DNA from: Macrostomum lignano
Taxonomy: Eukaryota
Direction: 5' to 3'
DNA: 29,754 bases
NCBI GenBank assembly: GCA_002269645.1
Contig: NIVC01004973.1
Span: 1 to 29,754, forward strand
Shown here: positions 1 to 29,754 of the stretch, piece after piece
How positions within the stretch are numbered: position 1 is the stretch's first letter
Layout: every line of letters begins with the position of its first letter
Made by a program: the position numbers and the translations under genes
The notes under the pieces: model-generated
What the model was told of the DNA's origin: nothing
Database searches by the model: none
What the model saw: only the letters and a program-made list of their open reading frames with translations

Positions 1-37
1 CGTGTAGTGGATTAGCTTGCACAGCTTTTAAGACAAT

Positions 38-2219
38 TTCTAGGGAGGATGAGATGAGATGAAATGAGAACTGGGAGTTTCATTAATTAGGAAGCAGCCA
101 AGCTTACAATGTCCAGAGCCGGACGAGTCCTCCACAACAGTCGCAGGTGGTCCATTCTCCACTGTTGGTGGAAGCCACCTGAATGGTTTGAAGAGTTCGT
201 TACAGGGCGGGGATTAGTGCAGTCTTAATTTAGCCAACGACATATCTACAGATACTATTCGAATAGCTTAGCAATTTTCACCATCACTTGTCCAGACTGA
301 CTGTCGCTGGTGCTATCGGATCTCCTTCTGGAGCCGACGAGGCTGAAAGAATTTAGCAGTAATTTTCGAGAGATTGTAATATAGAATAAATTGTGAGATC
401 AGAGCCGAGAGTATAATGCACTAGATGTAGAATGTAGAGCTACTGAGTCCATCAGAGTCCTCTTGTCAAAAGATGATGTCCAAAGAGATTAGTATATCAG
501 CGCTTAGTGAGACTAGACGATAGTCTAAAGAGACTGGATCTCAGTGTATAGTGGAGACTAGATAGTCTAAAGAGACTGGATCTCAATAGTGAGACTAGAT
601 GATAGTCTAGATAGATTGGATCGCAGTCTCAGAAGCCCGTGTATATAACTCTGAGAGAACAAGGAATATCATAAGATGAGAAACTAATTTAAGAAATTGA
701 ACGCAAATCTTACACTGTCCAGAGCTGGACGAGTCCTCCACAACAGTCCAGGTGGTCCATTCTCCACTGCTGGAGGAGCCTGAGGTGCGGATGATTATCA
801 GTTGGTTTTCTTACAGTTTCAATGTTAAATCATAATTATAATCGGGTTATTCGTGCACACTTATTGGACTAACCCTCACTGCTGCCGCCGCCAGACCTCT
901 TTCTGGAGCTGCCGGAGCTGGATGACGCTAAAATCATTGTGAGATGGTCAGTTGCTAAATTCGGTTGTCAACTGTAAATGGAATACTGAAGACTGAGGAC
1001 TAAGGGAAGGTATTGGAATCAGGGAAAGCATAGGAATCAGGGGAATCAGGGGAATCAGGGGGAAGCAAAGGAAGCAGGGAAAGCAGGGGAATCAGGGGGA
1101 AGCAAAGGAAGCAGGGAAGCAGGGGAAGCAGGAAAAGCAAGGGAAGCAGGGGAATCAGGGGAAGCAGGGGAAGCAGGAAAAGCAAGGGAAGCAGGGGAAT
1201 CAGGGGAATCAGGGGAATCAAGGGAATCAGGGGAAGCAGGAAAAGCAAGGGAAGCAGGGGAATCAGGGGAATCGGGGGAATCAGGGGAATCAGGGGAAGC
1301 AGGGGAAGCAGGGGGAGCATGGGAATCAGGGGAAGCAGGGGAAGCAGGGGGAGCATGGGAAGCAGGGACTCAGGGGAATCAGGGGAAGCAGGGGAAGCAG
1401 GGGAAGCAGGGGAAGCAGGGGAAGCAGGGGGAGCATGGGAAGCAGGGGACTCAGGGGAAGCAGGGGAAGCAGGGTGAGCATGGGAAGCAGGGGACTCAGG
1501 GGAATCAGGGGAATCAGGGAAAGCAGGAAAAGCAAGGGAAGCAGGGGAATCGGGGGAATCAGGGGAATCAGGGGAAGCAGGGGAAGCAGGGGGAGCATGG
1601 GAAGCAGGGGACTCAGGGGAATCAGGGTAAGCAGGAGAAGTGATACATGTAGAGGATTTAGCAAAAACAAAGGCCAAGCAGCAACTTACAGCTGGAGTCG
1701 CCACCAGACGTGTCCACAACCCACTCGGTCCACGAAGTGGACACCACGGATTGGACGTCGTCACCTGATGATTATCGCACAGAGGATTTAGTATATTAGC
1801 AATCTATACAGTTGATTTGTTGATTTTCGAACAGTCTTCATATTTATTTACCCGACTTCGCGTCTCCGGAGCTCGTGCTCCACTCAGTCCACTCGCCCCA
1901 TACGGTCTCTAGAAACAAGAAAGTATTGGTCAGGAGTACATACATGTACGGTGGAGTGAGCGCTTGGCACCAGCATTTATATTACGGGCTTCACACCTAC
2001 GCTAACATATCTTCAAGTCAAGTAAGTCAAATTCTATCAGCTTACCTTCGCTTGAGGCCACTGTGACTCCAATGCAGAATACTGCAGTGAAAAAATGTGT
2101 TCGGAACTTGGTAACTTTTTCTCTATTGACAGCAAAAGAACAGCAACAACAAAAGCAGAAACAAGTCACCAACCTGCAAGGAGCAGCACGCCGAGTTTTT
2201 GCATTCCTGGCGCGCTCAT
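38..2219 (-). CDS. Small secreted Ser/Gly-rich protein with repeated WxxW motifs, encoded by micro-exons (about 153 aa if two exons are frame-corrected)
   Basis: Manual splice assembly: exons 2219-2174, 2081-2046, 1908-1852, 1764-1690, 927-880 and 779-714 all have GT..AG phase-1 junctions, and the five internal ones have lengths divisible by 3. They give MSAPGMQKLGVLLLAVFCIGVTVASSEETVWGEWTEWSTSSGDAKSGDDVQSVVSTSWTEWVVDTSGGDSSSSSSSGSSRKRSGGGSSSSSSGEWTTWTVVEDSSSSGQ. Exons 342-282 and 178-108 are homologous to earlier exons but carry indels. A final acceptor (..CCTCCCTAG, exon from 39) creates a split T|AA stop. Confidence 0.75.
505..625. repeat. Degenerate tandem repeat, about 3 copies of a 35-40 bp unit (GAGACTAGATAGTCTAAAGAGACTGGATCTCA..)
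   Basis: Unit visibly repeated inside an intron of the micro-exon gene. Confidence 0.7.
1005..1636. repeat. Intronic 9-bp minisatellite (CAGGGGAAG / CAGGGGAAT variants)
   Basis: Dozens of G-rich 9-mer copies lying between micro-exons 1764-1690 and 927-880. It explains the Pro/Leu and GSR/GIR pseudo-ORFs. Confidence 0.95.
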
Positions 2220-3259: not shown

Positions 3260-3649
3260 TGCCAATGCTTTGTCCCCGCGCCCCCACCCCACCTTTTGAC
3301 CCATTATGGAAATCAATAATTTTGCTTCAGGGTGACAAAACGTAGCGCCTGCAGGATCAAAATAAGTGCATGTGGCGCTAAAATGAGTGCCTGTGGCGCT
3401 AAAATGAGTGCCTGCGCGCTAAAATGAGTGCCTGTGGCGCTAAAATGAGTGCCTGTGGCGCTAAAATGAGTGCTGGCGGCGCTAAAATGAGTGCCTGCGG
3501 CGCTAAAATGAGTGCTTGCGGCGCTAAAATGATTGATGATAACACAGATTCGGAAATAATGTACATTTAGGAATTTAGTCATGTACATGTACATGTATAA
3601 TTCTCGGCTTTTGTCCTCCCCCACTATAAAATCCATGGCGACGCCCCTG
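3260..3649 (-). mobile_element. Possible non-autonomous DNA transposon remnant hosting the 21-bp array
   Basis: On the minus strand it begins CAGGGGCGTCGCCATGG (3649-3633), a GC-rich MITE-like terminus. The opposite end and TSD could not be resolved. Confidence 0.3.
3360..3530. repeat. 21-bp tandem repeat GGCGCTAAAATGAGTGCCTGT, about 8 copies
   Basis: Directly visible head-to-tail units with minor variants. Confidence 0.92.
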
Positions 3650-6900: not shown

Positions 6901-9820
6901 TCAGTTGCCCTCGCTGGCCAGCTGGGCCATGATCTCCCGCTCCAGCTCGTCGTCTTCTTCTCCGGCAGGCCCAGCAGCAGCAGCAGCGGATTTAGTCTGC
7001 TCAGAATTGACCAGCTCAAATTCTTTCAGCTCGCGTTGCAGCTCGCCTTCCCAATCGTCCGCATCCTCGCCACCAGCTGCCGATCCGACAGCAGTGGCGG
7101 CGGTGCCGCCGCCGATTTGCTGGCGTTCAACTGAGGACAGGGCGGCTGGCTGCTGGTTTGCCAGCTCCGAGCTGGCGAAGTCGCCACAGTCCGCTCCGTC
7201 GTTGTCGTCGTCATCCTCGTCGGCAGCTCCAGGGATGGCTGCTCTTGGAGAGTCTCTCGACGAAGCCGGGGAGGACCGCAACTGCTGCTGCTGCAGATAA
7301 GCCGACGAAGACGAAGGCGGAGGCGAGACTTTCTCGTAGCCGGCGTCGCTCGAAGTCGACGCGGAATCGGCGGCAGCGGCTCCGCCGGCATTCGCAGCCG
7401 CGGCGACTGCCGAGGCTGAACCGCTGAAGGCGGCATTGGATCTGGCCAGGGCCGACAGCTGCGAGGACTGACGGATGAGGCTCACCTGGGCGATGAGGCA
7501 CCGGGGGAGGGGTGCTGAGACTGGGCCAGTAAAGGGCAGCAATAAAACAGCATCAAAGTAATTTGGGGAAAGAGGAGGTTGAGCCCTGTGAAAACGGTCA
7601 AGAAGCGCCCCAGAGTTGTTGCAGGTGGTACAGGTAAAATAAGACAGACAAAGAAGTGATTTTCAACGTTTTTTAAACGACGAGATGTCACGTTACAAGT
7701 CGGCAAGAAGTCGTCAAAGAGTTGCCCAAGAGTCGAGTTGAGGCGTTTTAGTCTGCGACGCCAGTGACTCTGGCGCGACGGTATAGCGACTATCATACAT
7801 GCTTAACACCTGGCCGATTCGGCCGGGTGGCGAGAGGTCTGGCCAAAGTAAATCGCAAGAATGCTAATCCGAAAAAAACGTTGTACCAATTAGATGACGA
7901 GGTGATTGGCCTTAATAATACAGTTATAGTTACTCCTTTCGTTTACCCAAAATTACGGTAATTTTTGCTTCAGGGTTTTTTCATAGGCAAGTCGCATTTT
8001 TGGTCAAAAAGTAAGTCGCACGGCCGGGTGAAACTTTAAAGCTAGGCATGTATGGCGACTATGGAGCGGAAGAGTCGTAGTTGAGGCGTGCTAGATTTGC
8101 TGAAGTCACTGAGTTGTGTTTGAATTTGCGTCGCTTGATGAGTTATGAGTCAAGTCTCTAGCAAAGTTTAGCGCTAACACAATGCCTATTGGACGACTCA
8201 CGTTTTCAAACTCAAACTTAAATCAATTCAAACTCTTACCCTATAGAAATAATTCCGCCAGAATTCGGCCTCTTTAACGCGTTTCGGCACCAATTCGAAT
8301 CGCATCTTGCGCAAATTATCGTCAACTTCTAGCGTTGCCATGGCAACAGGCGAGCAGGACTCCAAATCGAAGGAGAAACTGGCGCCCTGCGGCGGACTGC
8401 GCAGAAAATTCCTAGTATCCTTGCTCAGAGCCAGAATCTGCTCGCGCAGCTGCTCTTCGTTCTCGTAGCCAACCCAGGGCGGCACGGCGGCCTCGGCCCG
8501 CGCCCGGCGCTCCGACTGGCTGCTGGCGAATTCCTTCTGCTGCCGATCGAACTCTTCGACAATGTTGGGCGCCGCGGCCAGCTGCTTGGCTTTGCTGGTG
8601 ACACTGGTTGTGGCTCGCTTGCCGAACGTGTAGATATATGAGCCAAGGTCCTTGGCCGTGTGCAGCAGCTCCTTTGACGGGTCCTTCTGCTGCTGCTGGT
8701 GTTCAGTTGGGGAATGAGAATGGCTAATTAAGAGATATTCAACGAATTGAACGCGAAGGCTGAAGGTTCAGAAGCTCCGCGTGGGTGAAGGTCAGTGACT
8801 AACGAAGGGATATTTGATGCAGACAAATTTGGTCGACATGCTGATAAAATTTAAAGGCTTGGCAAGGCAGCACATTTGCGTGTAAGCTACTTTCAGTTCA
8901 GTAGTAAGTTACGCTTAAAGCATTTTAATGTGTCTTTTTAAGACAAGGCTCTTTTGTTGGCTCTTACCCCCGTCAGGCATAAAACCTTAAACTCCCAATT
9001 TTTATTACCTTCCTCGGTTGTTCCAGCTCTAATCTGCCATGTACATTTCAGACTCAGTGGCTAATGTAAATTATGGCTGAACCAATTAGCAAGCTGTTTA
9101 CGTCTGAAAGCTTGGCTTCTAAACTTATCAGTCATCTCAATTGCCTTTATTCTCTTAAAATAGCTTATATATTCTTCATTGCTACTGAACTGAAAGTAGA
9201 AAGCTGTTTTGCTAAGCATTTATGCCTGAGTGGCCTATCTAGACACTCAGTATCTGTGGGCTGCACTGAATACACTGACTGGTGCTTATGGGAAACATCA
9301 AACCTTCTGACAGAATCGTTGAATATCTCGACCGTCTGGAGGGCTGGCGACTTGATTCTTGTTTGAGAAAGTGCGAAAAAATTTTCAGGGGAGGGGATAC
9401 CCTTTGGTAGTTTTAATGTTAAAAAGGATATTTTTTTCAATTTTGTACCGTGACTGATGACGCAAAAGTCAGGGACACTATACACCTGTAAGTATGGTCC
9501 ATGATCACTAAAATAGTTTTAAATTTTGGCTGCCATTCAAGCTTAAGTATTTCTGAATATGCTTAGAAAAATTTAATACAAATTAGTTTATGAGCCTATA
9601 TAGCTCATTGACATAGAATATAGCAAGTATCAAATAAAAGACTCTGTCTTACCCCAGTCTCCTTTCCAGAGATATTGGCATCAACATTCACACCTGGCTC
9701 TGTTTCCTGCTCAGACAGATTTTTCTTATTAGCCAAATGAGCAGCATCTTCATCATTGTCTGTTGGTGCAGCTGCTGGAGTGGCACCGGCACCCCACCAG
9801 TTTTTTACACTGGATAGCAT
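6901..9820 (-). CDS. SYAP1: Synapse-associated protein 1 / Sap47 (BSD domain), 3 coding exons, about 402 aa
   Basis: Exons 9820-9653, 8695-8240 and 7485-6901, all phase 0 with GT..AG. Family motifs: [59 protein letters not shown] and the C-terminal DDWEGELQRELKEFELV. Confidence 0.93.
7794..8054 (+). mobile_element. MITE, CATACATGC family, copy 1 (SYAP1 intron 2)
   Basis: Termini CATACATGC / GCATGTATG and a perfect 8-bp TSD GCGACTAT (7786-7793, 8055-8062). Confidence 0.9.
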
Positions 9821-14526: not shown

Positions 14527-17500
14527 ATGCCCTTTAAGTTTTTGAAGCAGCTTAAGGTGGTTGAACTTAAAGAGAAGTTGTATATACGCAAGCTTGATGT
14601 GTCTGGAAACAAGGCAGATCTTGTTGAACGCCTACGAAAGGTATTAAATCCTTGATTAGGCTAGGCCTTTTTCTTTCCTGTTTTCGTAGTTTTATATGTG
14701 TACATTAATTGCTCGCTTTATTGGCCTTTTAATGCTAGTCTACTGGCTTTTAGTTAAAAAATAGCAAAAAATTAAGAGTTAGGTAGGCCAGCATTATATA
14801 GCAAACTCATTGTCTTAATCTCTTAGTTTGTTCTGTTAGTTTAATCTCTGGATTATTTTTAAAAGAGCTTTTCTTGATTGATATTTAACTACTGTATTCA
14901 AAGTATAGAAGGATTTCCATGCACAACTGAAGGTAAATTTTAGTTTTAGTCTCTTATACAATAGTACAAGTCATAATTTTACTTTGGCTATGCAACAATC
15001 CACAATACACAAAACAGTTCATAATAAACTCATTTTGTTAGGCCTATCATAGTTATCCCTAACAATATTTCACTTTTATTCTAGCTATAAGTTTAAGTGT
15101 TGATTGAATTTAAAAATATCATTACATTATACAATACAAAGCCAAAGGCAGACTAAAACAAAAAGTGCACCAATGCAGTTTAATAGAATGGTGCATAATG
15201 CTTTCAATAAGACTATTGTATTTTGCAGTTTTTATACTTATACTATAGAAAAAACATGTCTAAGACCAGGATGGAATTCTTACACAAAAGTTGTTAGGCA
15301 TTTGTGCATGCTTGTCAAATTCATGCTCGCTGGTGCGCTGAAAAGGAGCCTACTTGCATGCTCTTAAAAAAGGTGTGTGTGTGCTCCATCGTATGCACTT
15401 GCAAAGAAGTTGTTTGCCATAGAATCATAGACAAGATTTGACTTTAAATGCATTTAACATGGTTATATGCCATGCCACACTCCGGATCATATAGTATACG
15501 GTGTAAGACCAAGATGGCCACACACCAAGATGGCCACAGCTGGGGTGGGGGTCACGGAGAATGACAACTGGTTTTCTATTGGATAGCTTCAGGTGGGGAG
15601 ATGTGGGGTTGCAATGGGGTGGGGGTTTAGACATGCAGTCAAAATTTTATTAGTATATTGCAGGGCTAAAGACAAAAATGGTTACGAGTCTTAATTTCCT
15701 ACTTATAGTAGGCCCCTAAGAGGTGTAAACATATTTCATATTAAACAAATCTCTTCTTCATATAAAATCTGGTGTCCCTATTGGAATAAATGTTAAAAAT
15801 CCGCGGACGCGCGCTTTAGAAAAGAGTCAAAATATTTTACCGCGCTTTAGGATTATTAGAGATAATCCGAAAGATCTGCAGTTTCGTCGAAATCAAAATT
15901 TGCTAACTTTCCAAAATCAAAATTGAAATTTCCCGAAATCATAATTCAGAAAAACAAAGTTTAGTATGATCAACACTCACTTTTTTACTTTCAATTTACT
16001 GCTTAAGCAAAAATTAATACATGTATATGTAGTAGAAAGTAGTTTATTTTTAGCGACTCTTTAGACACTACCAAAATTTTCACTTCTAAATTTTTTTCTA
16101 AATTGAAATTCGCTCTAAAAAATTTCAAATTTTGGAAAATTGAAATTGAATTCTCGGAACATCTCTAAGCTTAATAAATTACGAGTGTATAAGCCCCTTC
16201 AACAGGGGTATTATACCCATTTCCATGTATATGTATTTGCTAGAGCAGCAGCCAGTAAGAAAGGGCAGCGCGCGCGCAGGCGATGCGCCTGTGCGCGCGC
16301 TGCGCTTTAGAAAAATTTCAAAAGTGCGCCGGACACCGTCCGCGGTTTTACAACTTTTTCCTATAGGGTCTGGTGTAGCTTTTTTCCATTTCTCTTATTG
16401 GTCGAGACTAATTTACTTGTTTAAAGGGATAAAAACTGGGTAAATTTCATGCCCTGTTCAAAATTCATCTGTCTCATTCACTGACAGCAGTCTAAGCACT
16501 TAGATACAAAATGGCAGGCGCATATCCATGTGTGGTCTGTCTGCAGCCCTTTTGCGATGGACAAGAAGCAATTGAGTGTTCTCAATGCTTGAATTGGCAG
16601 CACCGTGCATGTGACAGTCGCGTCACAATCAATCAGTATTCTGCAATGAGAAATGTCGGTGAGTTTTTCTGGCTTTGCAATCAATGCAATAGACGGGCTC
16701 CTGCAGGTAACTTAGCAGTGTCTCAAGCTGCAGATGCTGCAGTGGTACATGTACAAGCCCCGAATTCTGGACCAGCGGCTGTTCCTCTGCCTGCTGAAAA
16801 TCCAGAACCAGTGCATTTGATTTCGGCACAAGCAGAAAATTTTCTTTACTATTTTACTATCTTTACTATCTTTAATAGCATGACACGGCCTTCACACATG
16901 GGGGCTCCAAGGCCTCCATGCTCCTTCCAGTGATTTTTTTAGAATAGTCTTTGGCTCTTAGCAAAGACAGCGCACTGCCCCCATCCACCAGAAGGTGCAT
17001 GGGTGGGCACATTCTCGATTGGATATTTTACAACAAAATCTCTCCTGCGTTGCCTTCTAGCTGGCCTCAGCTGGTACAAGTCGGGCACCTTTTCAAACAT
17101 AGGCTTCTTTCCTATGTTTGCTATCTATCTTTCCTATCTTTCCTTCTTTCCTAAGGGGAGAGAGTGGAGACCAGAGATAAATGAGAAGAGAGAGCAAAGA
17201 TGAAAGAGAAGAGAGGTGAGGGAAGATCGACGAGAGAAGATGGGAGAGAGGAGATAGGAAAGAAGAGAAGAAAGAGAGAAGAGAGAGAGAGAGAAAACAA
17301 AATAGAAGATAGAAGTTTTAAAGGATCCGAGGGACATAGAGAGAGACAAGAGGCCAGAGATTTTGCCAATACATGTTTTCAAAAGACAAGTTTTTGTTTG
17401 ACAACAACAACAACAACAACAGAGTACGCTGCCAGTTCACAAAAGCAGCGTCAGATGGCGCGCTTCAAAGCTTGGGCGCGAACAAAAGCCGCACCGCCGG

Positions 17501-20500
17501 CAGAGTCCGGGGCGCCGGCGTCAGCCAGCAGACAGTTGACGTAGCGCCGAGTCTTCGCCTGTCCCCGCCGGTAGGGTGCCTGCAACGTAAGTAGCAGCAC
17601 CTCCTGCACCGGCTCCGGACAGTAGGCCTTGGCGCGGATGACGTGGCCTGCCAGCTGGAGTCGCCGACGGCGCAGCAGATCGCTAGGACGGGCCAGGCCG
17701 GCGCGATGATAGAGCGCCGTGTTGGTGACTCGCTCGTTGCCGATCTTGAAGGTGGCGCGCAGCAGGCCAGCGTGCGCCGTGTCGACTTGAGCCTCGAGCG
17801 AGTCTGTCAGCGTCCAGGTCTCGGCGTTGTATAATAGGATGGTCTCGATCACCGCCTAGAACAGCGCCGCCCTCTGGCGGTCCGGTAGGGCCTCGGGCTG
17901 CAGGACTGACCTTATAGAACGAAAGGCAGCCCAAGCAAGTCCTCGGCGACGCCGCAGATCCTCGTGGACGTCGGGAACCAGACTGCCAAGGTAGACCAAC
18001 TGCTGACATCTTGGAAGCTCACTCGCCTGTCCATCAGCGCCTTGGCAGAAAATTGCAGCCTCGGTGTCGTCCGGCACGCATAGCACGACGGTCTTCTGCA
18101 TGTTGACCACCAGGTCGACGCTCGCCGCAACGGCAACCAGCCTATCCAGCTGTCGTTTGTTTGAGTATGACTTCAGATTTTAGAACTAGATATAAGCTGA
18201 GCTGAGAGAGAAGATGAAAGTAGAGGCTGAGAGTAGAGAGAGGCTGAGAGTGGAGAGGCTGAGAATAGAGAGGTTGAGAGTAGATAGAGGCTGAGAGTAG
18301 AGAGGTTGAGAGTAGAGAGGCTAGTTCACATTGTTCTCAATCCCATTCCACTATACATGTAGTTTTTATCTAATGTGACTAAGCCAGGTGCTTTTAGTGC
18401 AGGGGTTGGCAAACTTTTTACCTTGATTGAGAACCTAGCTCATGACTGCCTTTCTATAGTCTGCTTCGTTGGCCCCCAAAGCGAAGCGAGGAGTCCTGAT
18501 GACAGCAGGCCAGAGGTGAGGAGAGAGGGTAAGGAATAGAGAAGAGAAATACAAACATAGGATAAAGGAGAGGCAAAGGAATAAAGGAGAAGAGAGTTGA
18601 TGAGAGGAGAGATTAAATATGAGCAGAGAGAGATCAGAGGAGAAGGGAGATTAATGGAGAGGAGAAAGGCGGGAAGGGAGAAGAGAATGAAGAGGAAAAG
18701 GGAGATGAGAGCAGAGGTGAGGAGAGAAGAGAGGATAGAGATGAGGAGAGAGGAGAGGAGAGAGGTGAGGAGAGGAGAAGGCAAGATATGAGAGAAGAGA
18801 GGGCAGAAATGAGAGAGAGAAAAGATTAGAGACGAGAGAGCAGAGATAAGAGAGAAAAGATAAGAGACAAGAGTGTAGAGATGAGAGAAAAGATCAGAGA
18901 AAAGAGGGCACTCCAATTTTTGCTTACTTCTATCATAACTAATACCTTTAACCTCTACCTTTAACTTTTAACATATACAAACAACACGTCAGTTTTAGTA
19001 TATTAAAGATAGGTTTGAAACTATTATCCATGATCCAAAAACCAAATGTATTGTGCTAGTAGTGCTACTAGCTTTAGTAGGTAGTAATACCTGCTGTAAA
19101 GGGAAGTGTTTTTTGTTTTACTTAGTCTAATTTCACTAACAAAATCTGTCTTCTCCGAGACTTGAAGCTAGGTCATACCCCATCCCAATCACAGCCAATA
19201 GGAAATGAGGAAATATATAGACCTATTCCTATCCAAGCAGCCATTCAGAGCTGTGGCCATCTTGGTGTGTTGCCATCTTGGTCATGTGCCTAGTATACGC
19301 CCGAAAATTTGGGCATGCATTGGCCTTGCACACCAAAGTTAGGCATGCACAGTTGGCGTGCATCACTCCTGAGAAAATAGTATGCGTGCACACCTGGCGT
19401 GTACTTTATAGAATCACGGGTAAGAGTTATTGTAAAGTAGAAAAAAGATGAAAAGAGTTCATTTTTAAGCATAAATTTCAAGCTTTCCAGTTTTTTCCAG
19501 CTCGTAAAAGACTATTTACACAAATTTTTGCGTATATAAACTTTCCGCTATAAATAGTATCGCCAAAAAAGCTTTAGAAGCAACAAAATATCTATCTAAT
19601 ATTAAGGGTCTATTATGCAATTTAAAAAAAGGAAAAAAAAGGTTGTTTATTGTCACAACGTAAAAAAAGGTATTTTATTATTGCAACACCGGCATATTTT
19701 TAAGAATGGGCATGCACTAAATTTTTTTCGGCATGCATTTGTAATTATTCAATTTTTGTTCGGGCGTGCACCCAGCATGATCCAGAGTATGCATGCCATA
19801 TAGTGTATGTGCACTCAAGTTCTACTTTTCATAGTCTGGAAGGTTGTGTTTACGCTGGAAAATTTTAAACAAAAATAAAACAAAGAATAAAAGTTTTTAG
19901 CAAAAAAAGTTACTTTGAAGTTTAGTGAAACTCTTATAATTTTTAAAGAATATTTTCTCTAAAAATTATAGTGTTCAAGCTACTATACACTTAAAGTATA
20001 ACTTTCTAATTTATGTCGGCATAAGAATTGAAAAACTAGAAATTTCATTTTTTAGCATATAGACCCACCATGCTCTGTATCATGATTTTTTACAGCTAGC
20101 GTGTACACTGCTCGTTTTCCTACCCCAAGCAAGAATTCCATCCTGGGACTAAGATATATTGTAAATTTCATTATGCATTCTGATATAATTAAGTATTATA
20201 TAGTATACCATATAAAAAATTTAGAACAACTCTACAATCAATGTACAAGGGGTGTCCCAAAAGTCTATGCAAAGTCTTTTTGTGACTACACTGGCTATTT
20301 ACCAAAATCATACATGCCCAACTTTGAAATTTCACCTAGCTTTGCAACTTACTTTGTGACCAAATATGCAACTTACTGATTAAAGAAGCTCTACTAAAGC
20401 AAAAATTAATGTGACTTGTGTAACTATGCATTATTATCATGAGTATATTATTAAGTAACTATGACTATATTTTAGGCTAAATTCTTTGTCATCTAATAAG

Positions 20501-23500
20501 TAGTACAATGTCTACTTTTTTAATTTTGGGTTAGCATTTTTGTGACTTACATTTGCTAGACCTTTTGTGCCACCTAGCCAAATTGGCCAGGTCAGCTAAG
20601 TGTTAGGCATGTATGACCAAAATGGTCTTTTCTTATTACAAAAATGAATATTATTAAAAGAAACATCTCACTAAAATCACAATAATCCTATTGGAAAGGT
20701 TAAGTATTTGACAAGTCAATAGTAGTATGCTATCCAATCACTCTTATTTGGTTACCAAACACTTATTTGAAAAAAAGCAGTACCATAAAATTTTTTTTAT
20801 CAAGTAGCTAGCTTTCAAGTTTCAAACATGGCATCAGAGATGTTGTGTATCACCCTGCATTTGGCCTTGGCCCTCGATATGGGCCCAAGACACCTCAATA
20901 AAATATCATGTTGGTACCAACCATTGGGTTGTTGGGGTCCTCAAAATAGAGTCAATAATTTAGAGTGACAATATATTAGCCAAACATTTGACATTCATAT
21001 ATCAAATGTTTTGGTTTGCTGAATTACATTAACATGTTGCTTAGAATCATTAAGTCATTTTAAGCTACTATAATGCACCCCATAGATTAATTTAACAATT
21101 TTATTATAAAATGTGTTATTGATACTTGGTTAAAAGTGTCCCCTTAATTTAATGCCTTCAATTTGTTATTAACCTGCAAAATTTTAGAACATGGAAGAAA
21201 ATGGCGAAGATGCTAGTGAATACCAGTTTGAAATTGAGACACGCGGTAAGATTATTGATTAATGTTTTTCTCACACTTTACTTGTTATTAATTAAGGTGT
21301 AACTGTGCGAACGTTATGAAAACTTCACCTTTCTATTGTTTTATTTTAGATGGCGATAATGCCCGGCTAAATGATTCGAAAAAAGAAGATCCACCAACAA
21401 CTATAGAGTCTGACATCTACTCAACTGACGTTGTAGACTATGTTGATGTGAGTAGTGGGTTATATGATTTTTTATTGTTGTAGCAGCAGTTTACTTTTTT
21501 ATTGATAAATGAGTTATGGCGAGACTAATATAATATTCTCTTAAACTTTGCAGGACGTTCAGGAAGAGTCTGGTGGTAAGCAATCATGTTTACATTCTTA
21601 TTTGCATCGTCAGCTTTCATCTGCACTCCCTTATCCTTCAGTGAAAGCAGAGTTGTCCCTAATAATGAATCCCGCAGTTGAAAATTTGTCAGAAAAAGTT
21701 GCAACCGAAGAAGACGGAGACAACGATTCTATGGCCGATGCTCACCTAGCGAGTCAGCAGGATGAGGAGCCGCAATTGCAGGAGTCTGGCAACGCGTCTA
21801 GCATCGCTAAAGATGAAGATAAACAACAAGAAGATGAATCTGCAAGCGCCGCTGAAGTTCATTCAAACGCGATAGTGTCAAAGCCGGTTTCAACTACTGC
21901 CGCTGAGGAGGCTTCGCTAGAGGTGCACGTTGAACAAACGGACGATCTCGACGAAGATTTGGCTAAGCATCAACGCTTGTCGTTGTCTTCTGCGGCTAAA
22001 AAGAGTCAGCAAGCTCATAAGTGGGCTTCTAAATCTAATGGGTTTGTAGTTTCGTTTTGTCTATTTTTATTGATGACTTTGCTGCATCTTAACTATTGTT
22101 TTGAATAATTTATTAAAAATTCCACTTTGCCAGCTCCGCTTCCGGACAGTCTTCTGCCGCTTCTAAGTCTAATGCTGTACCCGCGTCTAAAGGTAAGTCG
22201 GCAAACTATTGTTTAATTGTGAAACGGCTTCCCTTACTATACGAGTTACTGATGACTGCAAGTTTCAATTTGTGGCAAGTTTGTTTAAATGTTGAAAAAT
22301 GGCGGGACGGGGGGTCTGCTGTTGCAATATGCAGCCTACAACTGATTCGACTGCAGCACGAATTGTCAAACAAAGACCGAGTCGACTGCAAGCCAGGATC
22401 TACTACAGAGATTCAATCTGTTCGACTGCTGTCAGAGCCTACTTACTCCGTGGACATCTAAATTGATCTTGGGTTTTATTTCTTTTGGTACATAACGATT
22501 TCAGTCGACAGAACCATGGATTAAACAACAATAAAGATCATTGGTCTTGCACTCCAGTTATTGTGGTATATGTCTGTGCTTCAAGTCAAGAATCCGCAGT
22601 TCGAAGCAACAGCATTAAAGAGGATTAGAAAACAAATAAACAACTGATCCTTGGGCACCATAAGTATTGTGGTAATAATGTTTTAGGCCCAAGTTTCCAC
22701 AGCTCAAATCGAGAATATTCAAGAAGAACAAAGAACTTAAAGCATTGATCGTGGGATCCAATTCTTGTGGTAATAATTTTTATTCAAGTTTCCACAGCTC
22801 TAATTGACATGATAACAACAAGGACAATCTGCAACTATTAAATCAACGCTTTGTTGCGCATGTCAAGTCTTCAAAGTAAATAAATTGACGAAACTTATTG
22901 CTCTGTCTTGTCTTTGAGTTCGAAACGTCGGTAAAAAAAGACAGGAAACGCTGGGGAAGAAAAACTATTCGCCCAAAATATTTAAATTTCGTTCTTGCAG
23001 ACAGCAAAAGCCTGTGGGTTAGCAACATCCACAGCAGTACAAAGGCCGTGGATCTCAAACAGCTATTTAGCAAGCACGGCAAAGTTCTCGCTGCTAAAAT
23101 TGTTGTCAACGCTAAAGGATCCAATCAGAAGCGCTACGGCCTCATACAGATGTCATCGGCTGACGAGGCTGACAAATGCCAGAAGAGTCTGCACAAGACT
23201 AGCTTGCATGGTCGGACAATCTACGTTGACCGGGCCAATTCGGAGCCATCTACTACTAAAAAAGCAGAGTCAGCATCATTGACTACTACTAAGTCGTCTT
23301 CATCAGCGGAAGCGACTACCGATGCGACTAAGTCTGCAACCACTGGCTCGTCGAAGTTAGAGACGACATCGACGACAAAGACTGCCGACAATAAGCCAAA
23401 GCCCGGCGTTATCAAGTTGCCAATTACGTCGTTCTCTTCTAACCAGGAGTCGGCGCGGACAGCGGCGGCTTCGGCTTCAATGTCGCGCGGCGGCAGCGGC

Positions 23501-25698
23501 GGCCGCTCTCGATCTCCAATTAGCGGACGCGCCGGCAGCGCCAGAAGCCGATCGAGGCAGCGTCAGCAGCACGGCCGACCGTCTACTGATCAGCGCCGGA
23601 GCGCCGGTAGCGATCGTCGACGCGGTAGCGCCGACGGCGCCGGTAATATTAGTAGAGTCCCCAGTGCTTTGCAGGGTGATCGGCGACGGTCCAGCGGCGG
23701 CAGTCGGGACCGCAATAACCGAGGACGAACTGCCAGCAGTCGGGATCGGGACAGTCGGGCGCGGACAGGAACAAGTCGGGACAGACTTGCCGAGGCGCAT
23801 CATCAGCATCGACCTGGCGCTCACACGTCTGCCCGGTCTAATCCTCCGCGAGAGCGGCGCACCTCGATGGAGAATAGCGGAATCCGGCGCCAAGCTGGCG
23901 CTCCTAGTTCCGGCGCTAGAAATGCACTGCTTGGCAGCGACCATTCGGCCAGCGCTAAAGGCGTCCGAGAAGACGATTTGCGTCACCTTTTGGCTGCCAG
24001 GGACGCCAAGAAGGCCGCAGAAGACGAGAAAGTGCGCCTAGAACGCGAACGCCGCCAACTAGAAGAATGGAAGAGGCGCGAAGAGGCGCGCACCCGCGAA
24101 AAGTTCGAACAGATGCAATACCTATTGCAAAAAGAGAAGGCCAATCTGGAGCGCGAGAAGCAAGAAATGAAACGTGAACAAGAGCGAGCTCTGATTGAAG
24201 AGAAACGCCGACTGGAACGGGAGAAAGAAGAGTACAGACGAATGAAGGAGCACCTGGAGGCTGAGCGACGCCAGCGCGAGGAGCGCGAGCGACGTGAACG
24301 GGCCGAACGTGAGGCGCGCGAACGCTGGGAGCGCGAGCGGAAAGCGCGCGAAGAGCGAGATCGACGCGAACGCGCCGAACGCGAGGCGGCAGTCGTGGCC
24401 GCTGCTAAAGAGCGCGAACGCGTCGAACGAGAGCGCGCCGAACGCGAGCGACAAGAGCGCGCTGAACGGGAGGCGCGCGAACGCCACGATCGAGAGGCGC
24501 GCGATCGAATGTCTAGGAAGCGCAACTCTAGCCGCGAGCGGGACGATCGTAAGCGATCAGCCTACGATTCGAGAGGAGGAGGCGGCGGCGGCTCCCGTCG
24601 GGATGGCGAGCGCGACAGAAGTCGGGATTATCACGGTGGCCAGGAGCAGCGCCAGCATAGGTAATGCAAAGTAATTTCGATCGCAAAAGTCAAAGGCACA
24701 GTGTGTTGCGGTCAGCACGGTCCACAGACCCGCGCGGCTTTGGGAATTTTGCCAGTGGTTTCTTAAAGCATTTTTAAACTTGCTTTTAACTAGACTCTTC
24801 AGAAAAGGTGTTCAGCATCGGAGTCCGTCGGCCTCTTCGACTATATCAAGCCTGATGCATGCATGCTGTTATGTTGGGTGAAACTGAAATTATTATTGTC
24901 AGTGTTTGAGTTATATACTGAGTATTATTGCTTCCTTCATGAGGGTTTTTCCACAGCTACTCAGCTAATTTTCGTGTAGTGTAAAGTACTATGATAAGAT
25001 AATTAATAAATATTTATCGTTAGGCATGCACAATTTACTGTAGTTTAGGGACTGGCCCTCAAGGGTGTTAATTGCACTGGGAATCGAGCCTGGGCCGCTG
25101 CGCTGGCACATCAGAGCGCCGCCTCCTTGGCTGATGTACAAAACGGCTACGACTGAATTTGTTTTCATAACAAAAAATAGCTTAAACCTTTCCTTCTTGC
25201 TACTGGACTGATAGTACTAAGAGTTTATTGCCATTTTATTACTATAGCCGAGGCCGCCAGCCCGAGCCAGATCAGCAGTCGCAGCGCTACTATCACCGCG
25301 GCGAGCCTCAGCGTCAGCATCAGCGAGGCGCTGGCGGTCATCATTTCTCTGCTCAGCAGCCGCAGCAGCCTAGCGGGCCAACCCTGGCCTGGACTGGCGG
25401 CAGCGGAGCAGCTGGTAGCTTAATTGGCGCCCACCTGCCTACAGCTCCAACTTTGCCCACTGGCATTGCCGGCGTCAGCTCCGCCCGGCCGCCGCAGCCG
25501 CCCCAGCTGCCGCCGCATCATCTGGCGCATCATCATCATCAGCCTCCACCGTCTGCAGCGGCGGCCTACATGTCTGGCCGGGTTGCTATGCCTGGTGCTG
25601 GCGGTTCAACCGGCTCTGGATCGGGCGGCGGTGCGCCAATGTTCCTTGGCGGATCGGCTAGTCACGGCTACGACGTGTCCTCTTCGAGGCGATTTTGA
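14527..25698 (+). CDS. SAFB: Scaffold attachment factor B / SLTM-like protein (SAP domain, acidic linker, RRM, Glu/Arg-rich coiled region, Gly-rich tail), 941 aa
   Basis: Exons 14527-14640, 21188-21245, 21350-21447, 21554-21575, 21678-22041, 22134-22192, 23001-24660 and 25248-25698 have compatible phases and total 2826 nt. SAP: [84 protein letters not shown]. Confidence 0.9.
15776..16368. mobile_element. 593-bp MITE with CCCTA..TAGGG termini nested in the GG element
   Basis: Imperfect ~33-bp TIR (CCCTATTGGAATAAATGTTAAAAATCCGCGGACG) and a perfect 8-bp TSD TCTGGTGT (15768-15775, 16369-16376). CpG-rich ends. Confidence 0.88.
16511..16933 (+). CDS. PHD-finger (C4HC3) ORF carried by the GG-ended transposon
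   Basis: YPCVVC..IECSQCLNWQHRAC..FWLCNQC has PHD ligand spacing. The 3' end is uncertain (possible donor GTAACT near 16708). Confidence 0.75.
   Translation: MAGAYPCVVCLQPFCDGQEAIECSQCLNWQHRACDSRVTINQYSAMRNVGEFFWLCNQCNRRAPAGNLAVSQAADAAVVHVQAPNSGPAAVPLPAENPEPVHLISAQAENFLYYFTIFTIFNSMTRPSHMGAPRPPCSFQ
17150..17350. repeat. GA-rich polypurine low-complexity tract
   Basis: Almost pure A/G on the + strand. Confidence 0.8.
17401..18155 (-). mobile_element. 5'-truncated RTE-like non-LTR retrotransposon fragment
   Basis: End of a reverse transcriptase and C-terminal region (LDRLVAVAASVDLVVNMQKT..LVYLGS..IETILLYNAETWTLT..RRRRLQLAGHVIR) with an in-frame TAG near 17856, a 3' (TTG)n tail at 17401-17420, and TSD TTTGTTTG (17393-17400, 18156-18163). 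Confidence 0.9.
18200..18322. repeat. 15-bp tandem repeat AGAGAGGCTGAGAGT
   Basis: About 6 degenerate copies. Confidence 0.8.
18500..18910. repeat. GA-rich polypurine low-complexity tract
   Basis: Strongly A/G-biased + strand. It explains the Leu/Ser and Arg/Glu pseudo-ORFs. Confidence 0.8.
20309..20615 (-). mobile_element. MITE, CATACATGC family, copy 3 (inverted, CpG-eroded)
   Basis: Termini CATACATGCCCAAC / GTTAGGCATGTATG and a perfect 8-bp TSD ACCAAAAT (20301-20308, 20616-20623). Aligns to copies 1 and 2 in reverse orientation. Confidence 0.88.
22555..22830. repeat. Degenerate ~100-bp tandem repeat, 2-3 copies, in SAFB intron 6
   Basis: Recurring TTGTGGTAATAAT..CAAGTTTCCACAGCTC blocks. 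Confidence 0.55.
25040..25135 (-). mobile_element. Degenerate tRNA-derived SINE-like fragment
   Basis: The minus strand reads ..CCAGCGCAGCGGCCCAGGCTCGATTCCCAGTGC with a B-box-like GGCTCGATTCCC, but no complete cloverleaf. Confidence 0.35.
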
Positions 25699-26269
25699 AC
25701 TGATTGCTATAATTACTATTTTATTAACTACTAATTCATATTGGTTTCAAATGCGTCAAAGTTTTCCTAACATCTGTTTAGTTAGCAGTTACCGGTCTGA
25801 CATTGAGGCAAACTAAAAATAATATCTCCTAGACTAGCACTTATATCCCCTATTCTAAAGACATGGATTGTCTGCTTGCGTCAACATTAGTATCTTACTA
25901 TCTTTAGTTTTTATGTTCGTTTCCCAGCATCTATAATGTTGTGTTTGTAATGTTGCCGTTATAAACCTATATGCGCTTGTGTGTTGACTAATAATTCAAA
26001 TATTTCTATGTTGCTAATGCAGTATATCGACCGATTTCAATTAATAGTACAACTTTCTGTATCCGAGGCTGTTACGAGTTGTAACCAACTGTGTTTCTTT
26101 AAATAAGAGTTTTCTAATTTATATTTAGTAGCTAGTAGTAAAATATAGTTTTCAGTTCGGGGTTCGGAGTGTTAACTTAACGCCCATGAGGGCCAATGGC
26201 TGTAGCACAGAGTGAGTGCATGTCTGAGAGATGATGCTTTTCAACATCGGAGTCTGGACACAGTAGTAA

Positions 26270-26670
26270 ACAGTGGAGTCAGTAGACAGTGGAGTCAGTA
26301 GACAGTAGAGTCAGTAGACAGTAGAGTCAGTAGACAGTGGAGTCAGTAGACAGTGGAGTCAGTAGACAGTGGAGTCAGTTGACAGTGGAGTCAGTTGACA
26401 GTGGAGTCAGTTGACAGTGGAGTCAGTAGACAGTGGAGTCAGTTGACAGTGGAGTCAGTAGACACAATAGTCAGTAGACAGTGGAGTCAGTAGACACAAT
26501 AGTCAGTAGACAGTGGAGTCAGTAGACACAATAGTCAGTAGACAGTGGAGTCAGTAGACACAATAGTCAGTAGACGGTAGTCAGTAGACACAATAGTCAG
26601 TGGACATTAGATCATGTAGACGCTGTAGTGGACATTAGATAATGTAGACGCAGTAGTGGACATTAGAGTC
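26270..26670. repeat. 16-bp minisatellite AGTAGACAGTGGAGTC with variant blocks
   Basis: About 20 copies, decaying at the 3' end, between SAFB and LATS. Confidence 0.95.
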
Positions 26671-28797: not shown

Positions 28798-28844
28798 GTG
28801 AGTCTGATTCGCCGGATTGTTTGTTTCATTCGCAACTATTTGTT

Positions 28845-29720
28845 TCATTCGCAACTATTAGATCTCTAATCTATAACTATTCGATCTCTAATCTAACTAT
28901 TCGATCTCTAATCTATCAACTATTCGATCTCTAACCCATCAACTATCGATCTCTAATCATCAACTATTCGATCTCTAATCTATCAACTATTCGATCTAAC
29001 CATCAACTATCGATCTCTAATCATCAACTATTCGATCTCTAATCTATCAACTATTCGATCTCTAATCTATCAACTATTCGATCTCTAACCATCAACTATT
29101 CGATCTCTAATCTATCAACTATTCGATCTCTAATCCATCAACTATTCTATATCTCTAATCCATCAACTATTCGATCTCTAACCCATCAACTATTCGATAT
29201 CTCTAATCCATCACTATTCGATCTCTAATCTATCAACTATTCGATCTCTAACCCATCAACTATCCGATCTCTAATCTATCAACTATTCGATCTCTAATCC
29301 ATCAACTATTCTATATCTCTAATCATCAACTATTCGATCTCTAACCCATCAACTATTCGATATCTCTAATCCATCAACTATTCGATCTCTAATCTATCAA
29401 CTATTCGATCTCTAACCCATCAACTATCCGATCTCTAATCTATCAACTATTCGATCTCTAATCCATCAACTATTCTATATCTCTAATCCATCAACTATTC
29501 GATCTCTAATCCATCAACTATTCGATATCTCTAATCCATCAACTATTCGATCTCTAATCTATCAACTATTCGATCTCTAACCCATCAACTATCCGATCTC
29601 TAATCTATCAACTATCGATCTCTACCATCAACTATTCTATATCTCTAATCCATCAACTATTCGATATCTCTAATCCATTAAATTCAACCTTTCTAATCCA
29701 TGAACACTATTTGATCTCTA
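28845..29720. repeat. ~23-bp minisatellite CTATTCGATCTCTAATC(C/T)ATCAA in a LATS intron
   Basis: Over 30 copies with length variants, starting just after the donor at 28798. Confidence 0.95.
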
Positions 29721-29754
29721 ATCCGTCAGCAACTCGACATAAAGTATACTTTTC

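What the first reader, a model, noticed from the sequence alone, without database searches (positions are those of the whole stretch)
38..2219. Hidden micro-exon gene encoding a secreted WxxW-repeat precursor
Seen: nine short exons joined only by phase-1 introns, invisible to the ORF track. They encode a signal peptide (MQKLGVLLLAVFCIGVTVASS), then Ser/Gly/Asp-rich segments with WGEWTEW, SWTEW and twice SGEWTTWTVVEDSS, separated by RKR and RRR. Established: W-x-x-W is the DPY19 C-mannosylation consensus, dibasic sites are prohormone-convertase targets, and acidic-Ser-Gly is a glycosaminoglycan attachment context. Inference: a processed multi-peptide precursor (adhesive, mucus, seminal or signalling) that I cannot assign to a known family. 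It lacks the cysteines of true TSP1 repeats and has no amidation Gly before the basic sites.
Basis: partly seen in the sequence, partly recalled or inferred. Interest (0 to 1): 0.8.

Follow-up and report, generated by a model that had tools for sequence, protein, structure and literature searches.

The report
Orphan flatworm secreted WxxW protein gene
This is a real-looking small split gene of the flatworm Macrostomum lignano that encodes an acidic, serine-rich secreted protein with tryptophan motifs.

Summary
The gene lies on the minus strand. Six exons (2219-714) join through canonical AG/GT sites. All five introns are phase 1 and internal exons are 36, 57, 75, 54 and 66 nt. The product has a signal-peptide-like N-terminus, then an acidic (pI ~4), 31-33% Ser, Cys-free chain with four WxxW motifs and one RKR. 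Two UniRef predictions from Macrostomum lignano share every one of these junctions: A0A1I8JM75 (94% identity) and A0A1I8II46, both named 'Secreted protein'. The core observation therefore holds.

The 3' part does not hold as written. Exons 7 and 8 are a diverged duplicate of exons 5 and 6. The RRR frame is not reached by phase-1 splicing. The second 'SGEWTTWTVVEDSS' carries a 1-nt insertion and reads SGEWTTC, then shifts frame. The intron between exons 7 and 8 is phase 2.

An exhaustive HMMER search, Pfam, PDB and AlphaFold2 gave no characterised relative and no fold. It is an orphan, probably disordered secreted protein. C-mannosylation, glycosaminoglycan attachment and convertase cleavage remain untested motif-level inferences. 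Transcription could not be checked here. Interest is modest.

The parts
2174..2219 (-). Exon 1 (46 nt). ATG at 2219-2217, with a second in-frame ATG at 2204-2202. Encodes MSAPGMQKLGVLLLA plus the first base of the next codon. This is the n-region and start of the h-region of the signal peptide. The donor is CAG|gttggt, phase 1.
   Evidence: P0001 and P0002 start MSAPG/MSASG and cross this junction identically.
2046..2081 (-). Exon 2 (36 nt, phase 1-1). Encodes VFCIGVTVASSE, the rest of the signal peptide and the probable cleavage region (VTVA|SS or ASS|EE).
   Evidence: AlphaFold2 predicts a helix at residues 6-25 in P0001. UniRef names both paralogues 'Secreted protein'.
1852..1908 (-). Exon 3 (57 nt, phase 1-1). 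Encodes ETVWGEWTEWSTSSGDAKS. It holds a WxxWxxW motif and two acidic Ser-Gly sites.
1690..1764 (-). Exon 4 (75 nt, phase 1-1). Encodes GDDVQSVVSTSWTEWVVDTSGGDSS and holds the WTEW motif.
928..1689 (-). Intron 4 (762 nt). It contains a 9-bp minisatellite (1015-1640, about 70 copies, unit GGAAGCAGG on the + strand). The minisatellite produces artefactual ORFs of 254, 114 and 118 aa.
   Evidence: It is absent from P0001 and P0002, which join GGDSS directly to SSSSSGSSRKR. After any 'gag' acceptor the phase-1 frame is the CFP frame, which has frequent TGA stops.
874..927 (-). Exon 5 (54 nt, phase 1-1). Encodes SSSSSGSSRKRSGGGSSE and carries the only in-frame basic triplet, RKR.
714..779 (-). Exon 6 (66 nt, phase 1-1). 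Encodes GSSSSGEWTTWTVVEDSSSSGQ. There are two overlapping donors: GGACAGT|gtaaga (phase 1, exon ends at 714) and GGACA|gtgtaag (phase 2, exon ends at 716). The phase-2 donor corresponds to the 'GH' junction annotated in P0001.
343..713 (-). Intron 6 (371 nt) with a 42-bp tandem repeat at 505-626.
284..342 (-). Exon 7, a diverged duplicate of exon 5. It is 55 nt if the weak donor CAA|gtgatgg at 288 is used. Otherwise it runs to the TGA at 286-284. The ancestral frame (…GSRRRSDSTSDSQSGQ) is one base out of register with a phase-1 entry. Phase 1 reads SSSAPEGDPIAPATVSLDK.
   Evidence: P0002 reads ASSGSRRRSGSSSDSQSGTSE in phase 1, which implies one more base in that locus.
108..178 (-). Exon 8 (71 nt), a duplicate of exon 6. 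The match is 91% over 76 nt and runs 11 nt past the exon at the donor end. One inserted C turns the second W of WTTW into C and shifts the frame. AG and GTAAG are retained.
1..39 (-). Possible exon 9. Acceptor ccctag|AA, where AA (39-38) completes a split T|AA stop. The 3'UTR would then run off the window edge.
   Evidence: There is no AATAAA/ATTAAA-type hexamer on the minus strand between 720 and 1, so the transcript end probably lies outside the window. This part is inferred and has no outside support.

Best explanation
WHAT IT IS. This is one copy of a small gene family, known so far only from Macrostomum lignano. It encodes a 130-150-residue secreted protein. The gene is assembled from short symmetric phase 1-1 cassette exons.

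THE PRODUCT.
- After a cleavable signal peptide the product uses only 11 residue types.
- Its layout alternates Ser/Gly/Asp/Glu spacers with three short beta-prone Trp/Thr/Val segments: TVWGEWTEWST, STSWTEWVVDT and GEWTTWTVVED.
- I read it as an intrinsically disordered, strongly acidic secretory product whose Ser/Thr-rich spacers carry O-linked modification (glycan, GAG or phosphate).
- Its WxxW sequons are available to the ER C-mannosyltransferase, if the species has one.
- That makes it a bulk component of a gland secretion, secretory-granule matrix, mucus or extracellular coat, rather than a source of bioactive peptides.

HOW IT EVOLVES. The cassette architecture lets modules be duplicated or dropped without breaking the frame. 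e5+e6 was duplicated to give e7+e8, and P0002 lacks the e6 module. In this copy the distal duplicate has picked up a -1 change in e7 and a +1 change in e8. It is therefore either decaying or mis-assembled.

SHOWN: the exon chain, agreement with the annotated paralogues, composition, motifs, and lack of detectable relatives or fold.

INFERRED: transcription, secretion, all modifications and the biological role.
For: - Canonical phase-1 chain with exon lengths in multiples of 3.
- P0001 (94% identity over 85% of the query) and P0002 reproduce all junctions from e1 to e5. P0001 also reproduces e5/e6.
- In e1-e6 the differences from P0001 are substitutions plus two in-frame indels (a GG insertion in e3, one Gly in e5), as expected under coding constraint.
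- Similarity between the two internal duplicates is confined to the exons plus about 11 nt at the donor. The introns do not align.
- The N-terminus has a basic n-region, a 15-residue hydrophobic core and a small-residue c-region. AF2 predicts a helix at 6-25. UniRef names it 'Secreted protein'.
- The mature part has pI ~4.05, 31-33% Ser, 12-14% Gly, 7 Trp and 0 Cys.
- AF2 mean pLDDT is 52, with nothing confident beyond the signal peptide.
- No Pfam family reaches threshold and there is no PDB relative.
- The only significant hit among 1.84e9 representatives is the paralogue.
- WxxW/C sequons are recognised in unfolded nascent chains by DPY19-type enzymes (PMC10154233).
- The M. lignano assemblies hold 180 Mb of duplicated blocks at 95% identity or more, which accounts for near-identical copies (PMC5730564).
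Against: - No transcript evidence was accessible.
  - The two UniRef entries are computational gene models.
  - The protein collection evidently lacks M. lignano read-derived sequences. The LATS exon in this window found nothing above 67% identity. Absence of transcript-derived ORFs is therefore uninformative.
- Paralogues differ by frame-shifting changes in e3 (P0002 DRMGDVVD against ETVWG) and in e7. This could mean weak constraint on the peptide sequence.
- Low pLDDT from a single sequence is weak evidence for disorder.
- Nothing ties the gene to a tissue.
- The role as a 'bulk secretion component' rests on composition only.
Confidence: 0.6

Rival explanations
1. The protein is a prohormone-like multi-peptide precursor. 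After signal-peptide removal, convertases cut at RKR and RRR. This releases two or three acidic WxxW peptides, possibly C-mannosylated, that act as signals or seminal or adhesive factors.
For: - RKR is in frame in e5, and KR/RR pairs are classical PC1/3 and PC2 sites (established knowledge).
- P0002 carries both RKR and RRR in frame.
- The module [basic site - Ser-rich - SGEWTTWTVVEDSS] was duplicated, as repeated peptides in precursors often are.
Against: - In this copy RRR and the second peptide are out of frame.
- No Gly precedes the basic sites, so there is no amidation signal.
- The 'peptides' would be 35-55 residues of low-complexity Ser/Gly/Asp, unlike known flatworm neuropeptides.
- P4 is Ser, so the furin R-x-[KR]-R motif is not met.
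- Paralogues tolerate frameshifts through the W motifs (P0002 e3), which is hard to square with a receptor-binding peptide.
- P0002 lacks the SGEWTTWTVVEDSS module altogether.
Confidence: 0.15
2. This particular copy is a non-functional or decaying duplicate, or the whole model is an ab initio artefact that is never expressed. Only other copies in the polyploid genome, if any, make protein.
For: - There are frame-disrupting indels in e7 and e8.
- The genome has extensive recent duplication (PMC5730564).
- No transcript-derived protein was found.
- P0001's annotated tail (LVALQKEIRQQQRQSVWDK) is itself an out-of-frame reading of the RRR exon.
Against: - e1-e6 are intact, with perfect splice sites and only in-frame indels relative to P0001.
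- The -1 and +1 changes compensate, so the nine-exon chain stays open.
- The indels could equally be assembly errors. REAPR rates only 32-64% of bases error-free in the two published assemblies (PMC5730564).
Confidence: 0.2
3. It is a degenerate remnant of thrombospondin type-1 repeats, that is, a TSR protein that has lost its cysteines.
For: - It has a WxxWxxW motif (WGEWTEWS) like the TSR Trp ladder.
- There are weak TSP1_2 hits on profile positions 5-24 only (E 0.015-3.6, 8-15.5 bits).
Against: - All scores fall far below the 27-bit gathering cut-off.
- There are no Cys, no Arg-ladder strand and no CSxTCG motif.
- Each hit covers 13-18 residues of a 66-position profile.
- The exhaustive search recovered no TSR protein.
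Confidence: 0.03

Closest known systems
UniProt A0A1I8JM75 and A0A1I8II46 (Macrostomum lignano, 'Secreted protein', uncharacterised)
   Same: Same family. A0A1I8JM75 is 94% identical over the e1-e6 product with identical exon junctions. A0A1I8II46 is 83% identical over the half of the query it covers (79% in the alignment) and shares e1-e5. All share the same signal peptide, W motifs and RKR.
   Different: - The tails differ by frame: GH-LVALQKEIRQQQRQSVWDK in one, and ASSGSRRRSGSSSDSQSGTSE (no e6 module) in the other.
- P0002 has lost the first two Trp of WGEWTEW.
- Neither annotated model includes an e8-like exon.
- None has any experimental characterisation that I could find.
Schistosome micro-exon genes (MEGs)
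   Same: - A signal peptide followed by a run of short symmetric exons whose lengths are multiples of 3.
- Products that are small, secreted and largely disordered.
- Lineage-restricted and fast-evolving.
- Modules can be dropped in frame.
- The exon range of 3-81 bp given in bioRxiv 10.1101/2023.06.21.545858 covers 36-75 nt.
   Different: - There is no sequence similarity.
- There are 7-9 exons, mostly 54-75 nt. MEGs have 10-20 exons, mostly about 15 nt.
- Introns here are 87-762 nt.
- The host is a free-living macrostomid, whereas MEGs are described as specific to Schistosomatidae.
- The MEG hydrophobic N-terminal motif is absent.
Thrombospondin type-1 repeat and other C-mannosylated WxxW proteins
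   Same: W-x-x-W(-x-x-W) sequons in a protein that enters the ER. These are the recognition element for DPY19-type C-mannosyltransferases (PMC10154233, PMC8433626).
   Different: There is no TSR fold: no cysteines and no Arg ladder. The motifs sit in a low-complexity acidic chain, and modification is unproven.
Serglycin and granin-type acidic secretory proteins
   Same: Small, very acidic, Ser-Gly-rich secretory-pathway proteins. This one has five acidic Ser-Gly sites. Like granins, it has scattered basic cleavage sites.
   Different: There is no homology. Ser-Gly dipeptides are scattered rather than in a long array. Trp-rich segments have no counterpart. This is an analogy by composition only.

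Membership tests
M. lignano 'Secreted protein' family (A0A1I8JM75 / A0A1I8II46) | Significant full-length sequence similarity with shared exon junctions | tested here: met
   E 4.8e-52 with 94% identity, and E 6.5e-32 with 83% identity. The alignment shows identical junction residues from e1 to e6.
Thrombospondin type-1 repeat (Pfam TSP_1 / TSP1_2) | Profile score above the curated cut-off | tested here: not met
   TSP1_2 scores 7.9-15.5 bits against a 27-bit cut-off and matches only profile positions 5-24 of 66.
Thrombospondin type-1 repeat (Pfam TSP_1 / TSP1_2) | Six conserved cysteines (three disulfides) and an Arg ladder pairing with the Trp ladder | tested here: not met
   There are 0 Cys in the mature e1-e6 product. 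The only Arg residues are in RKR.
Thrombospondin type-1 repeat (Pfam TSP_1 / TSP1_2) | WxxWxxW Trp motif | tested here: met
   WGEWTEW in e3. The other two motifs are single WxxW.
Schistosome micro-exon genes | Signal-peptide exon followed by short symmetric exons (multiples of 3, 3-81 bp) | tested here: met
   e2-e6 are 36, 57, 75, 54 and 66 nt, all phase 1-1. The definition is from 10.1101/2023.06.21.545858.
Schistosome micro-exon genes | 10-20 very short exons (mostly about 15 bp) forming most of the CDS | tested here: not met
   There are 7-9 exons, and only one is 36 nt or shorter.
Schistosome micro-exon genes | Sequence relationship to a MEG family; Schistosomatidae origin | tested here: not met
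   The exhaustive phmmer found no schistosome protein. The source is M. lignano.
Schistosome micro-exon genes | Protein variation by in-frame exon skipping | tested here: inconclusive
   P0002 lacks the e6 module, but it comes from a different locus. No transcript data are available.
Neuropeptide / prohormone precursor | Repeated peptides each flanked by basic cleavage sites | tested here: not met
   In this copy only one basic site (RKR) and one SGEWTTWTVVEDSS are in frame.
Neuropeptide / prohormone precursor | Amidation Gly before basic sites, or similarity to a known precursor | tested here: not met
   The basic sites are preceded by SS and GS. No related protein was found outside the family.
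C-mannosylated proteins (DPY19 substrates) | WxxW/C sequon in a chain translocated into the ER | tested here: met
   There are four sequons after a signal-peptide-like N-terminus. The sequon definition is from PMC10154233.
C-mannosylated proteins (DPY19 substrates) | A DPY19-type enzyme present in the organism | not tested
A literature search for DPY19 in Platyhelminthes found nothing.
C-mannosylated proteins (DPY19 substrates) | +162 Da on Trp in the mature protein | not testable with these tools
   This needs mass spectrometry.
Proteoglycan core protein (serglycin-like) | Ser-Gly dipeptides flanked by acidic residues | tested here: met
   SGD, SGDD, DTSG, SGGD and SGE. This is a motif match only.
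Proteoglycan core protein (serglycin-like) | Attached GAG chains; homology to a known core protein | not testable with these tools
   No homology was found. GAG attachment needs biochemistry.

The most novel reading that the evidence does not exclude
A free-living flatworm makes a cysteine-free, intrinsically disordered protein whose main ordered features are serial WxxW sequons. On this reading it is a dedicated C-mannosylated, possibly GAG-bearing, secretory product outside the TSR, cytokine-receptor and mucin contexts. It is encoded by a MEG-like cassette-exon gene. That would place MEG-style gene architecture outside parasitic flatworms and define a new class of C-mannosylation substrate.
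Probability: 0.1. Interest if true: 0.6.

Novelty: new member of a known kind. Interest (0 to 1): 0.3.

Why it matters
As it stands, this is one more lineage-restricted secreted protein in a duplicate-rich genome, with paralogues already in UniProt.

- If the gene is expressed in one of the well-studied M. lignano glands (adhesive, cement, prostate, rhabdite), it would be a tractable candidate for RNAi and in situ work.
- Its four WxxW sequons in a disordered, Cys-free chain would make a clean natural substrate. It could show whether C-mannosylation has roles beyond stabilising TSR folds.
- The symmetric-exon build is a small case study of how cassette exons let secreted low-complexity proteins expand and decay.
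- The finding also carries a practical warning. The attractive 'two identical peptides between basic sites' picture depends on two silent frame corrections.

Tried and rejected
- Minisatellite as a mucin-like exon. The PAS/PDS frame on the minus strand is open for 254 codons. I rejected it for three reasons. P0001 and P0002 skip it. A phase-1 entry after any 'gag' acceptor lands in the CFP frame, which has frequent TGA stops. A 1-nt slip switches the frame midway.
- Plus-strand gene over 38-2219. The only ORF is the minisatellite's 118-aa ORF. Rejected.
- Further copies in the window. tblastn found none beyond e1-e8.
- Rfam over the whole window gave no hits.
- Paralogue loci. The look-up of encoding contigs for P0001 and P0002 found nothing on record, so no paralogue DNA was available. 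The e7 '-1' is inferred from protein alignment only.
I ran P0001 alone instead. Its one extra hit, P0003 (1856 aa, E 4.6e-4), aligns only to residues 78-129 of the query, the Ser-rich RKR stretch, the e6 module and the annotated tail. I did not inspect P0003's sequence and treated the hit as a probable low-complexity match.
- Organism and database coverage. The RRM ORF search saturated at 8000 candidates with no hit. The LATS exon search found only 55-67% identical proteins from other organisms. M. lignano is therefore poorly represented. The absence of more family members or transcript-derived ORFs is weak evidence.
- Literature. Peptide strings and both UniProt accessions appear in no held paper, nor in the supplements of the seminal-fluid screen PMC5977470. 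No paper describes micro-exon genes in Macrostomum. The 2015 genome paper could not be read.
- Fold search was not run, because the model's pLDDT (52) would make any match meaningless.
Full report
WHAT IS IN THE SEQUENCE

The feature lies on the minus strand. A three-frame translation and exact exon mapping give a chain of six exons.

| Exon | Coordinates | Length (nt) |
|---|---|---|
| e1 | 2219-2174 | 46 |
| e2 | 2081-2046 | 36 |
| e3 | 1908-1852 | 57 |
| e4 | 1764-1690 | 75 |
| e5 | 927-874 | 54 |
| e6 | 779-714 | 66 |

Every acceptor ends in AG, four of the five after a clear pyrimidine run (e4's is purine-rich). Every donor begins GT, four of the six as GTAAG/GTAAA. All five introns are phase 1 and all internal exons are multiples of three.

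The product is MSAPGMQKLGVLLLAVFCIGVTVASSEETVWGEWTEWSTSSGDAKSGDDVQSVVSTSWTEWVVDTSGGDSSSSSSSGSSRKRSGGGSSEGSSSSGEWTTWTVVEDSSSSGQ. No exon is longer than 25 codons. The mechanical ORF list shows only artefacts of a minisatellite in this region.

Four WxxW motifs fall in these 111 codons. All six frames of the whole 29.7-kb window hold only 24.

INDEPENDENT SUPPORT AND ORGANISM

A search of the 5.8-billion-protein collection with the spliced product returned two proteins. Both are from Macrostomum lignano and both are named 'Secreted protein' by UniRef.
- A0A1I8JM75 (P0001): 131 aa, E 4.8e-52, 94% identity.
- A0A1I8II46 (P0002): 114 aa, E 6.5e-32.

The alignment shows that both cross every junction from e1 to e5 at exactly the residues predicted here. 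P0001 also crosses e5/e6.

Within e1-e6 the window copy differs from P0001 by a few substitutions and two indels. Both indels are whole codons: GG in e3 and one G in e5.

The neighbouring genes are metazoan:
- a long RRM-protein exon at 22898-24664;
- LATS1/2-type kinase exons at 27456-28869.

M. lignano assemblies carry 180 Mb of duplicated blocks at 95% identity or more, and 15% simple or tandem repeats (PMC5730564). This fits both the near-identical paralogues and the repeat-filled introns.

These UniRef entries are computational gene models. I believe they derive from the annotation of the first PacBio assembly, but I could not verify this. They corroborate the exon chain but do not prove transcription.

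Exons 7 (342-288) and 8 (178-108) are a diverged duplicate of exons 5 and 6.
- e6 and e8 align at 91% over 76 nt. That stretch is the exon plus 11 nt of the donor.
- e5 and e7 align at 78% over 27 nt.
- The introns do not align at all.

e8 carries an extra C: acctgCgactg against acctggactg. The supposed second SGEWTTWTVVEDSS therefore reads SGEWTTCDCCGGLVRLWTL* in one frame and ...PPATVVEDSSGSGH in the next.

The RRR frame of e7 is one base out of register with a phase-1 entry. P0002 reads ASSGSRRRS in phase 1, which implies one more base at tcgtc(c)ggc in that locus.

Three 3' models are possible.

| Model | Splicing | Tail |
|---|---|---|
| A | Phase-1 entry, stop at TGA 286-284 | ...GQSSSAPEGDPIAPATVSLDK* |
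| B | All ancestral sites used, split T\|AA stop at 39-38 | ...DKWLPPTVENGPPATVVEDSSGSGH* (153 aa) |
| C | Alternative phase-2 donor at 716, matching the 'GH' junction in P0001 | ...GHLVGSRRRSDSTSDSQSGQVASTNSGEWTTCDCCGGLVRLWTL* |

In model B the e7/e8 intron is phase 2, and the -1 in e7 and +1 in e8 cancel. So 'only phase-1 introns', an in-frame 'RRR' and 'twice SGEWTTWTVVEDSS' cannot all be true of this sequence.

This is not absurd. REAPR rates only 32-64% of bases in the published assemblies as error-free, and fewer transcripts keep intact ORFs in the older assembly (PMC5730564). It is nonetheless a correction, not an observation.

No poly(A) hexamer occurs on the minus strand between 720 and 1. 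The transcript end is probably beyond the window edge.

WHAT KIND OF PROTEIN

N-terminus:
- a basic n-region (K8);
- a 15-residue hydrophobic core;
- a small-residue c-region (VTVASS);
- an AlphaFold2 helix at residues 6-25, with nothing confident after it (mean pLDDT 52).

Mature e1-e6 part:
- only S, G, D, E, T, V, W, A, K, R and Q are used;
- pI about 4.05, 33% Ser, 14% Gly, 7 Trp, no Cys.

The layout alternates acidic Ser/Gly spacers with three Trp/Thr/Val segments.

Family searches gave little.
- Pfam gives only sub-threshold TSP1_2 matches, confined to the Trp motif (8-15.5 bits against a 27-bit cut-off).
- PDB sequences give nothing.
- An exhaustive phmmer of P0001 against 1.84 billion representatives finds only its paralogue, plus one weak hit that I treated as a probable low-complexity match without inspecting it.

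The family is therefore an orphan as far as these databases can see. There is a caveat. M. lignano itself is poorly covered, since the LATS exon of this window found nothing above 67% identity. Other Macrostomum species are probably absent.

MECHANISM

The best-supported reading is an intrinsically disordered, acidic secretory protein whose spacers are modified on Ser/Thr. It would be a bulk component of a gland secretion, granule matrix, mucus or coat.

Motif-level support:
- The four WxxW sequons fit the requirement of DPY19-type C-mannosyltransferases, which act on unfolded nascent chains (PMC10154233, PMC8433626).
- Five acidic Ser-Gly sites fit the xylosyltransferase context.
- Six S-x-[DE] sites (three are S-x-E) would suit a Golgi casein-kinase. 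This point rests on my own knowledge.

None of these was tested, and I did not establish that M. lignano has DPY19 (one search found no literature).

The precursor model is weaker for several reasons.
- Only one basic site and one peptide are in frame here.
- There is no amidation signal.
- The fragments would be long low-complexity chains.
- P0002 tolerates loss of the e6 module, and a frame change removes the first two Trp of WGEWTEW.

A third possibility is that this copy is decaying, or that the model is never expressed. This cannot be excluded without reads.

COMPARISON WITH KNOWN SYSTEMS

It is a member of the uncharacterised M. lignano 'Secreted protein' family (tested and met).

It is not a TSR. 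The profile score, the cysteines and the Arg ladder were all tested and not met. Only the WxxWxxW motif is shared.

It works like a schistosome micro-exon gene in architecture. Shared traits are a signal peptide followed by symmetric short exons within the 3-81-bp range quoted in bioRxiv 10.1101/2023.06.21.545858, and a small, probably disordered product known so far from one species. It fails on exon number, exon size and sequence relationship. 'MEG-like' is therefore an analogy, not membership.

Serglycin and granin-type proteins are compositional analogues only.

VERDICT

The core observation is real and the gene model for e1-e6 is well supported. The 3' repeats as described are not in frame. 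The functional reading remains motif-level speculation.

Near-identical copies are already annotated, though uncharacterised. No paper mentions them or their peptides.

Novelty is a new member of a known but uncharacterised kind, and interest is modest at 0.3. The most novel reading not excluded is a MEG-style gene in a free-living flatworm encoding a new, disordered class of C-mannosylation substrate. I give that about 10%.

Noticed in passing
window 1015-1640 (intron 4 of the gene): A 9-bp minisatellite of about 70 copies (GGAAGCAGG; 82% matches). It creates stop-free artefactual ORFs of 254 and 114 aa on the minus strand and 118 aa on the plus strand. A 1-nt slip near 1370 switches the minus-strand reading from PAS/PDS to LLP/LIP repeats.
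   Followed up: yes
window 505-626 (intron 6): A 42-bp tandem repeat, 3 copies, 80% matches.
   Followed up: no
window 15507-15541 and 19249-19283: A 35-nt inverted repeat pair (97% complementary, each arm itself a 16-nt tandem duplication) with 3707 nt between the arms. The enclosed stretch contains a PHD-finger ORF (16511-16933, +) and an ORF at 17451-17852 (-). That second ORF looked reverse-transcriptase-like to me but had no Pfham/Pfam hit. The stretch also holds purine-rich simple repeats at 17.1-18.9 kb. This is probably a composite transposable-element insertion.
   Followed up: partly
window 22898-24664 (+): A long single exon (588-aa ORF) with an RRM domain (E 7e-13) followed by Ser/Arg- and Arg/Glu-rich low complexity. 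It resembles SAFB-type proteins, which is my own impression. The homology search saturated and returned nothing.
   Followed up: partly
window 27456-28007 and 28489-28869 (+): Exons of a LATS1/2 (warts) type kinase. The second exon is 55-67% identical to LATS-like fragments from other organisms. No M. lignano entry was found in the protein collection.
   Followed up: partly
window 28852-29728: A 23-bp satellite of about 38 copies with a higher-order period of 164 bp. It starts immediately after the kinase exon, presumably in an intron.
   Followed up: no
window 26265-26590 and 3359-3532: Further minisatellites: a 16-bp unit in about 20 copies and a 21-bp unit in about 8 copies. This is in line with the 15% tandem-repeat content reported for this genome (PMC5730564).
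   Followed up: no
window 6901-7542 (-): A GC-rich 213-aa ORF, Ala/Ser/Asp-rich, with no Pfam hit and several overlapping ORFs on both strands. It may be an exon of an unidentified gene or a compositional artefact.
   Followed up: partly
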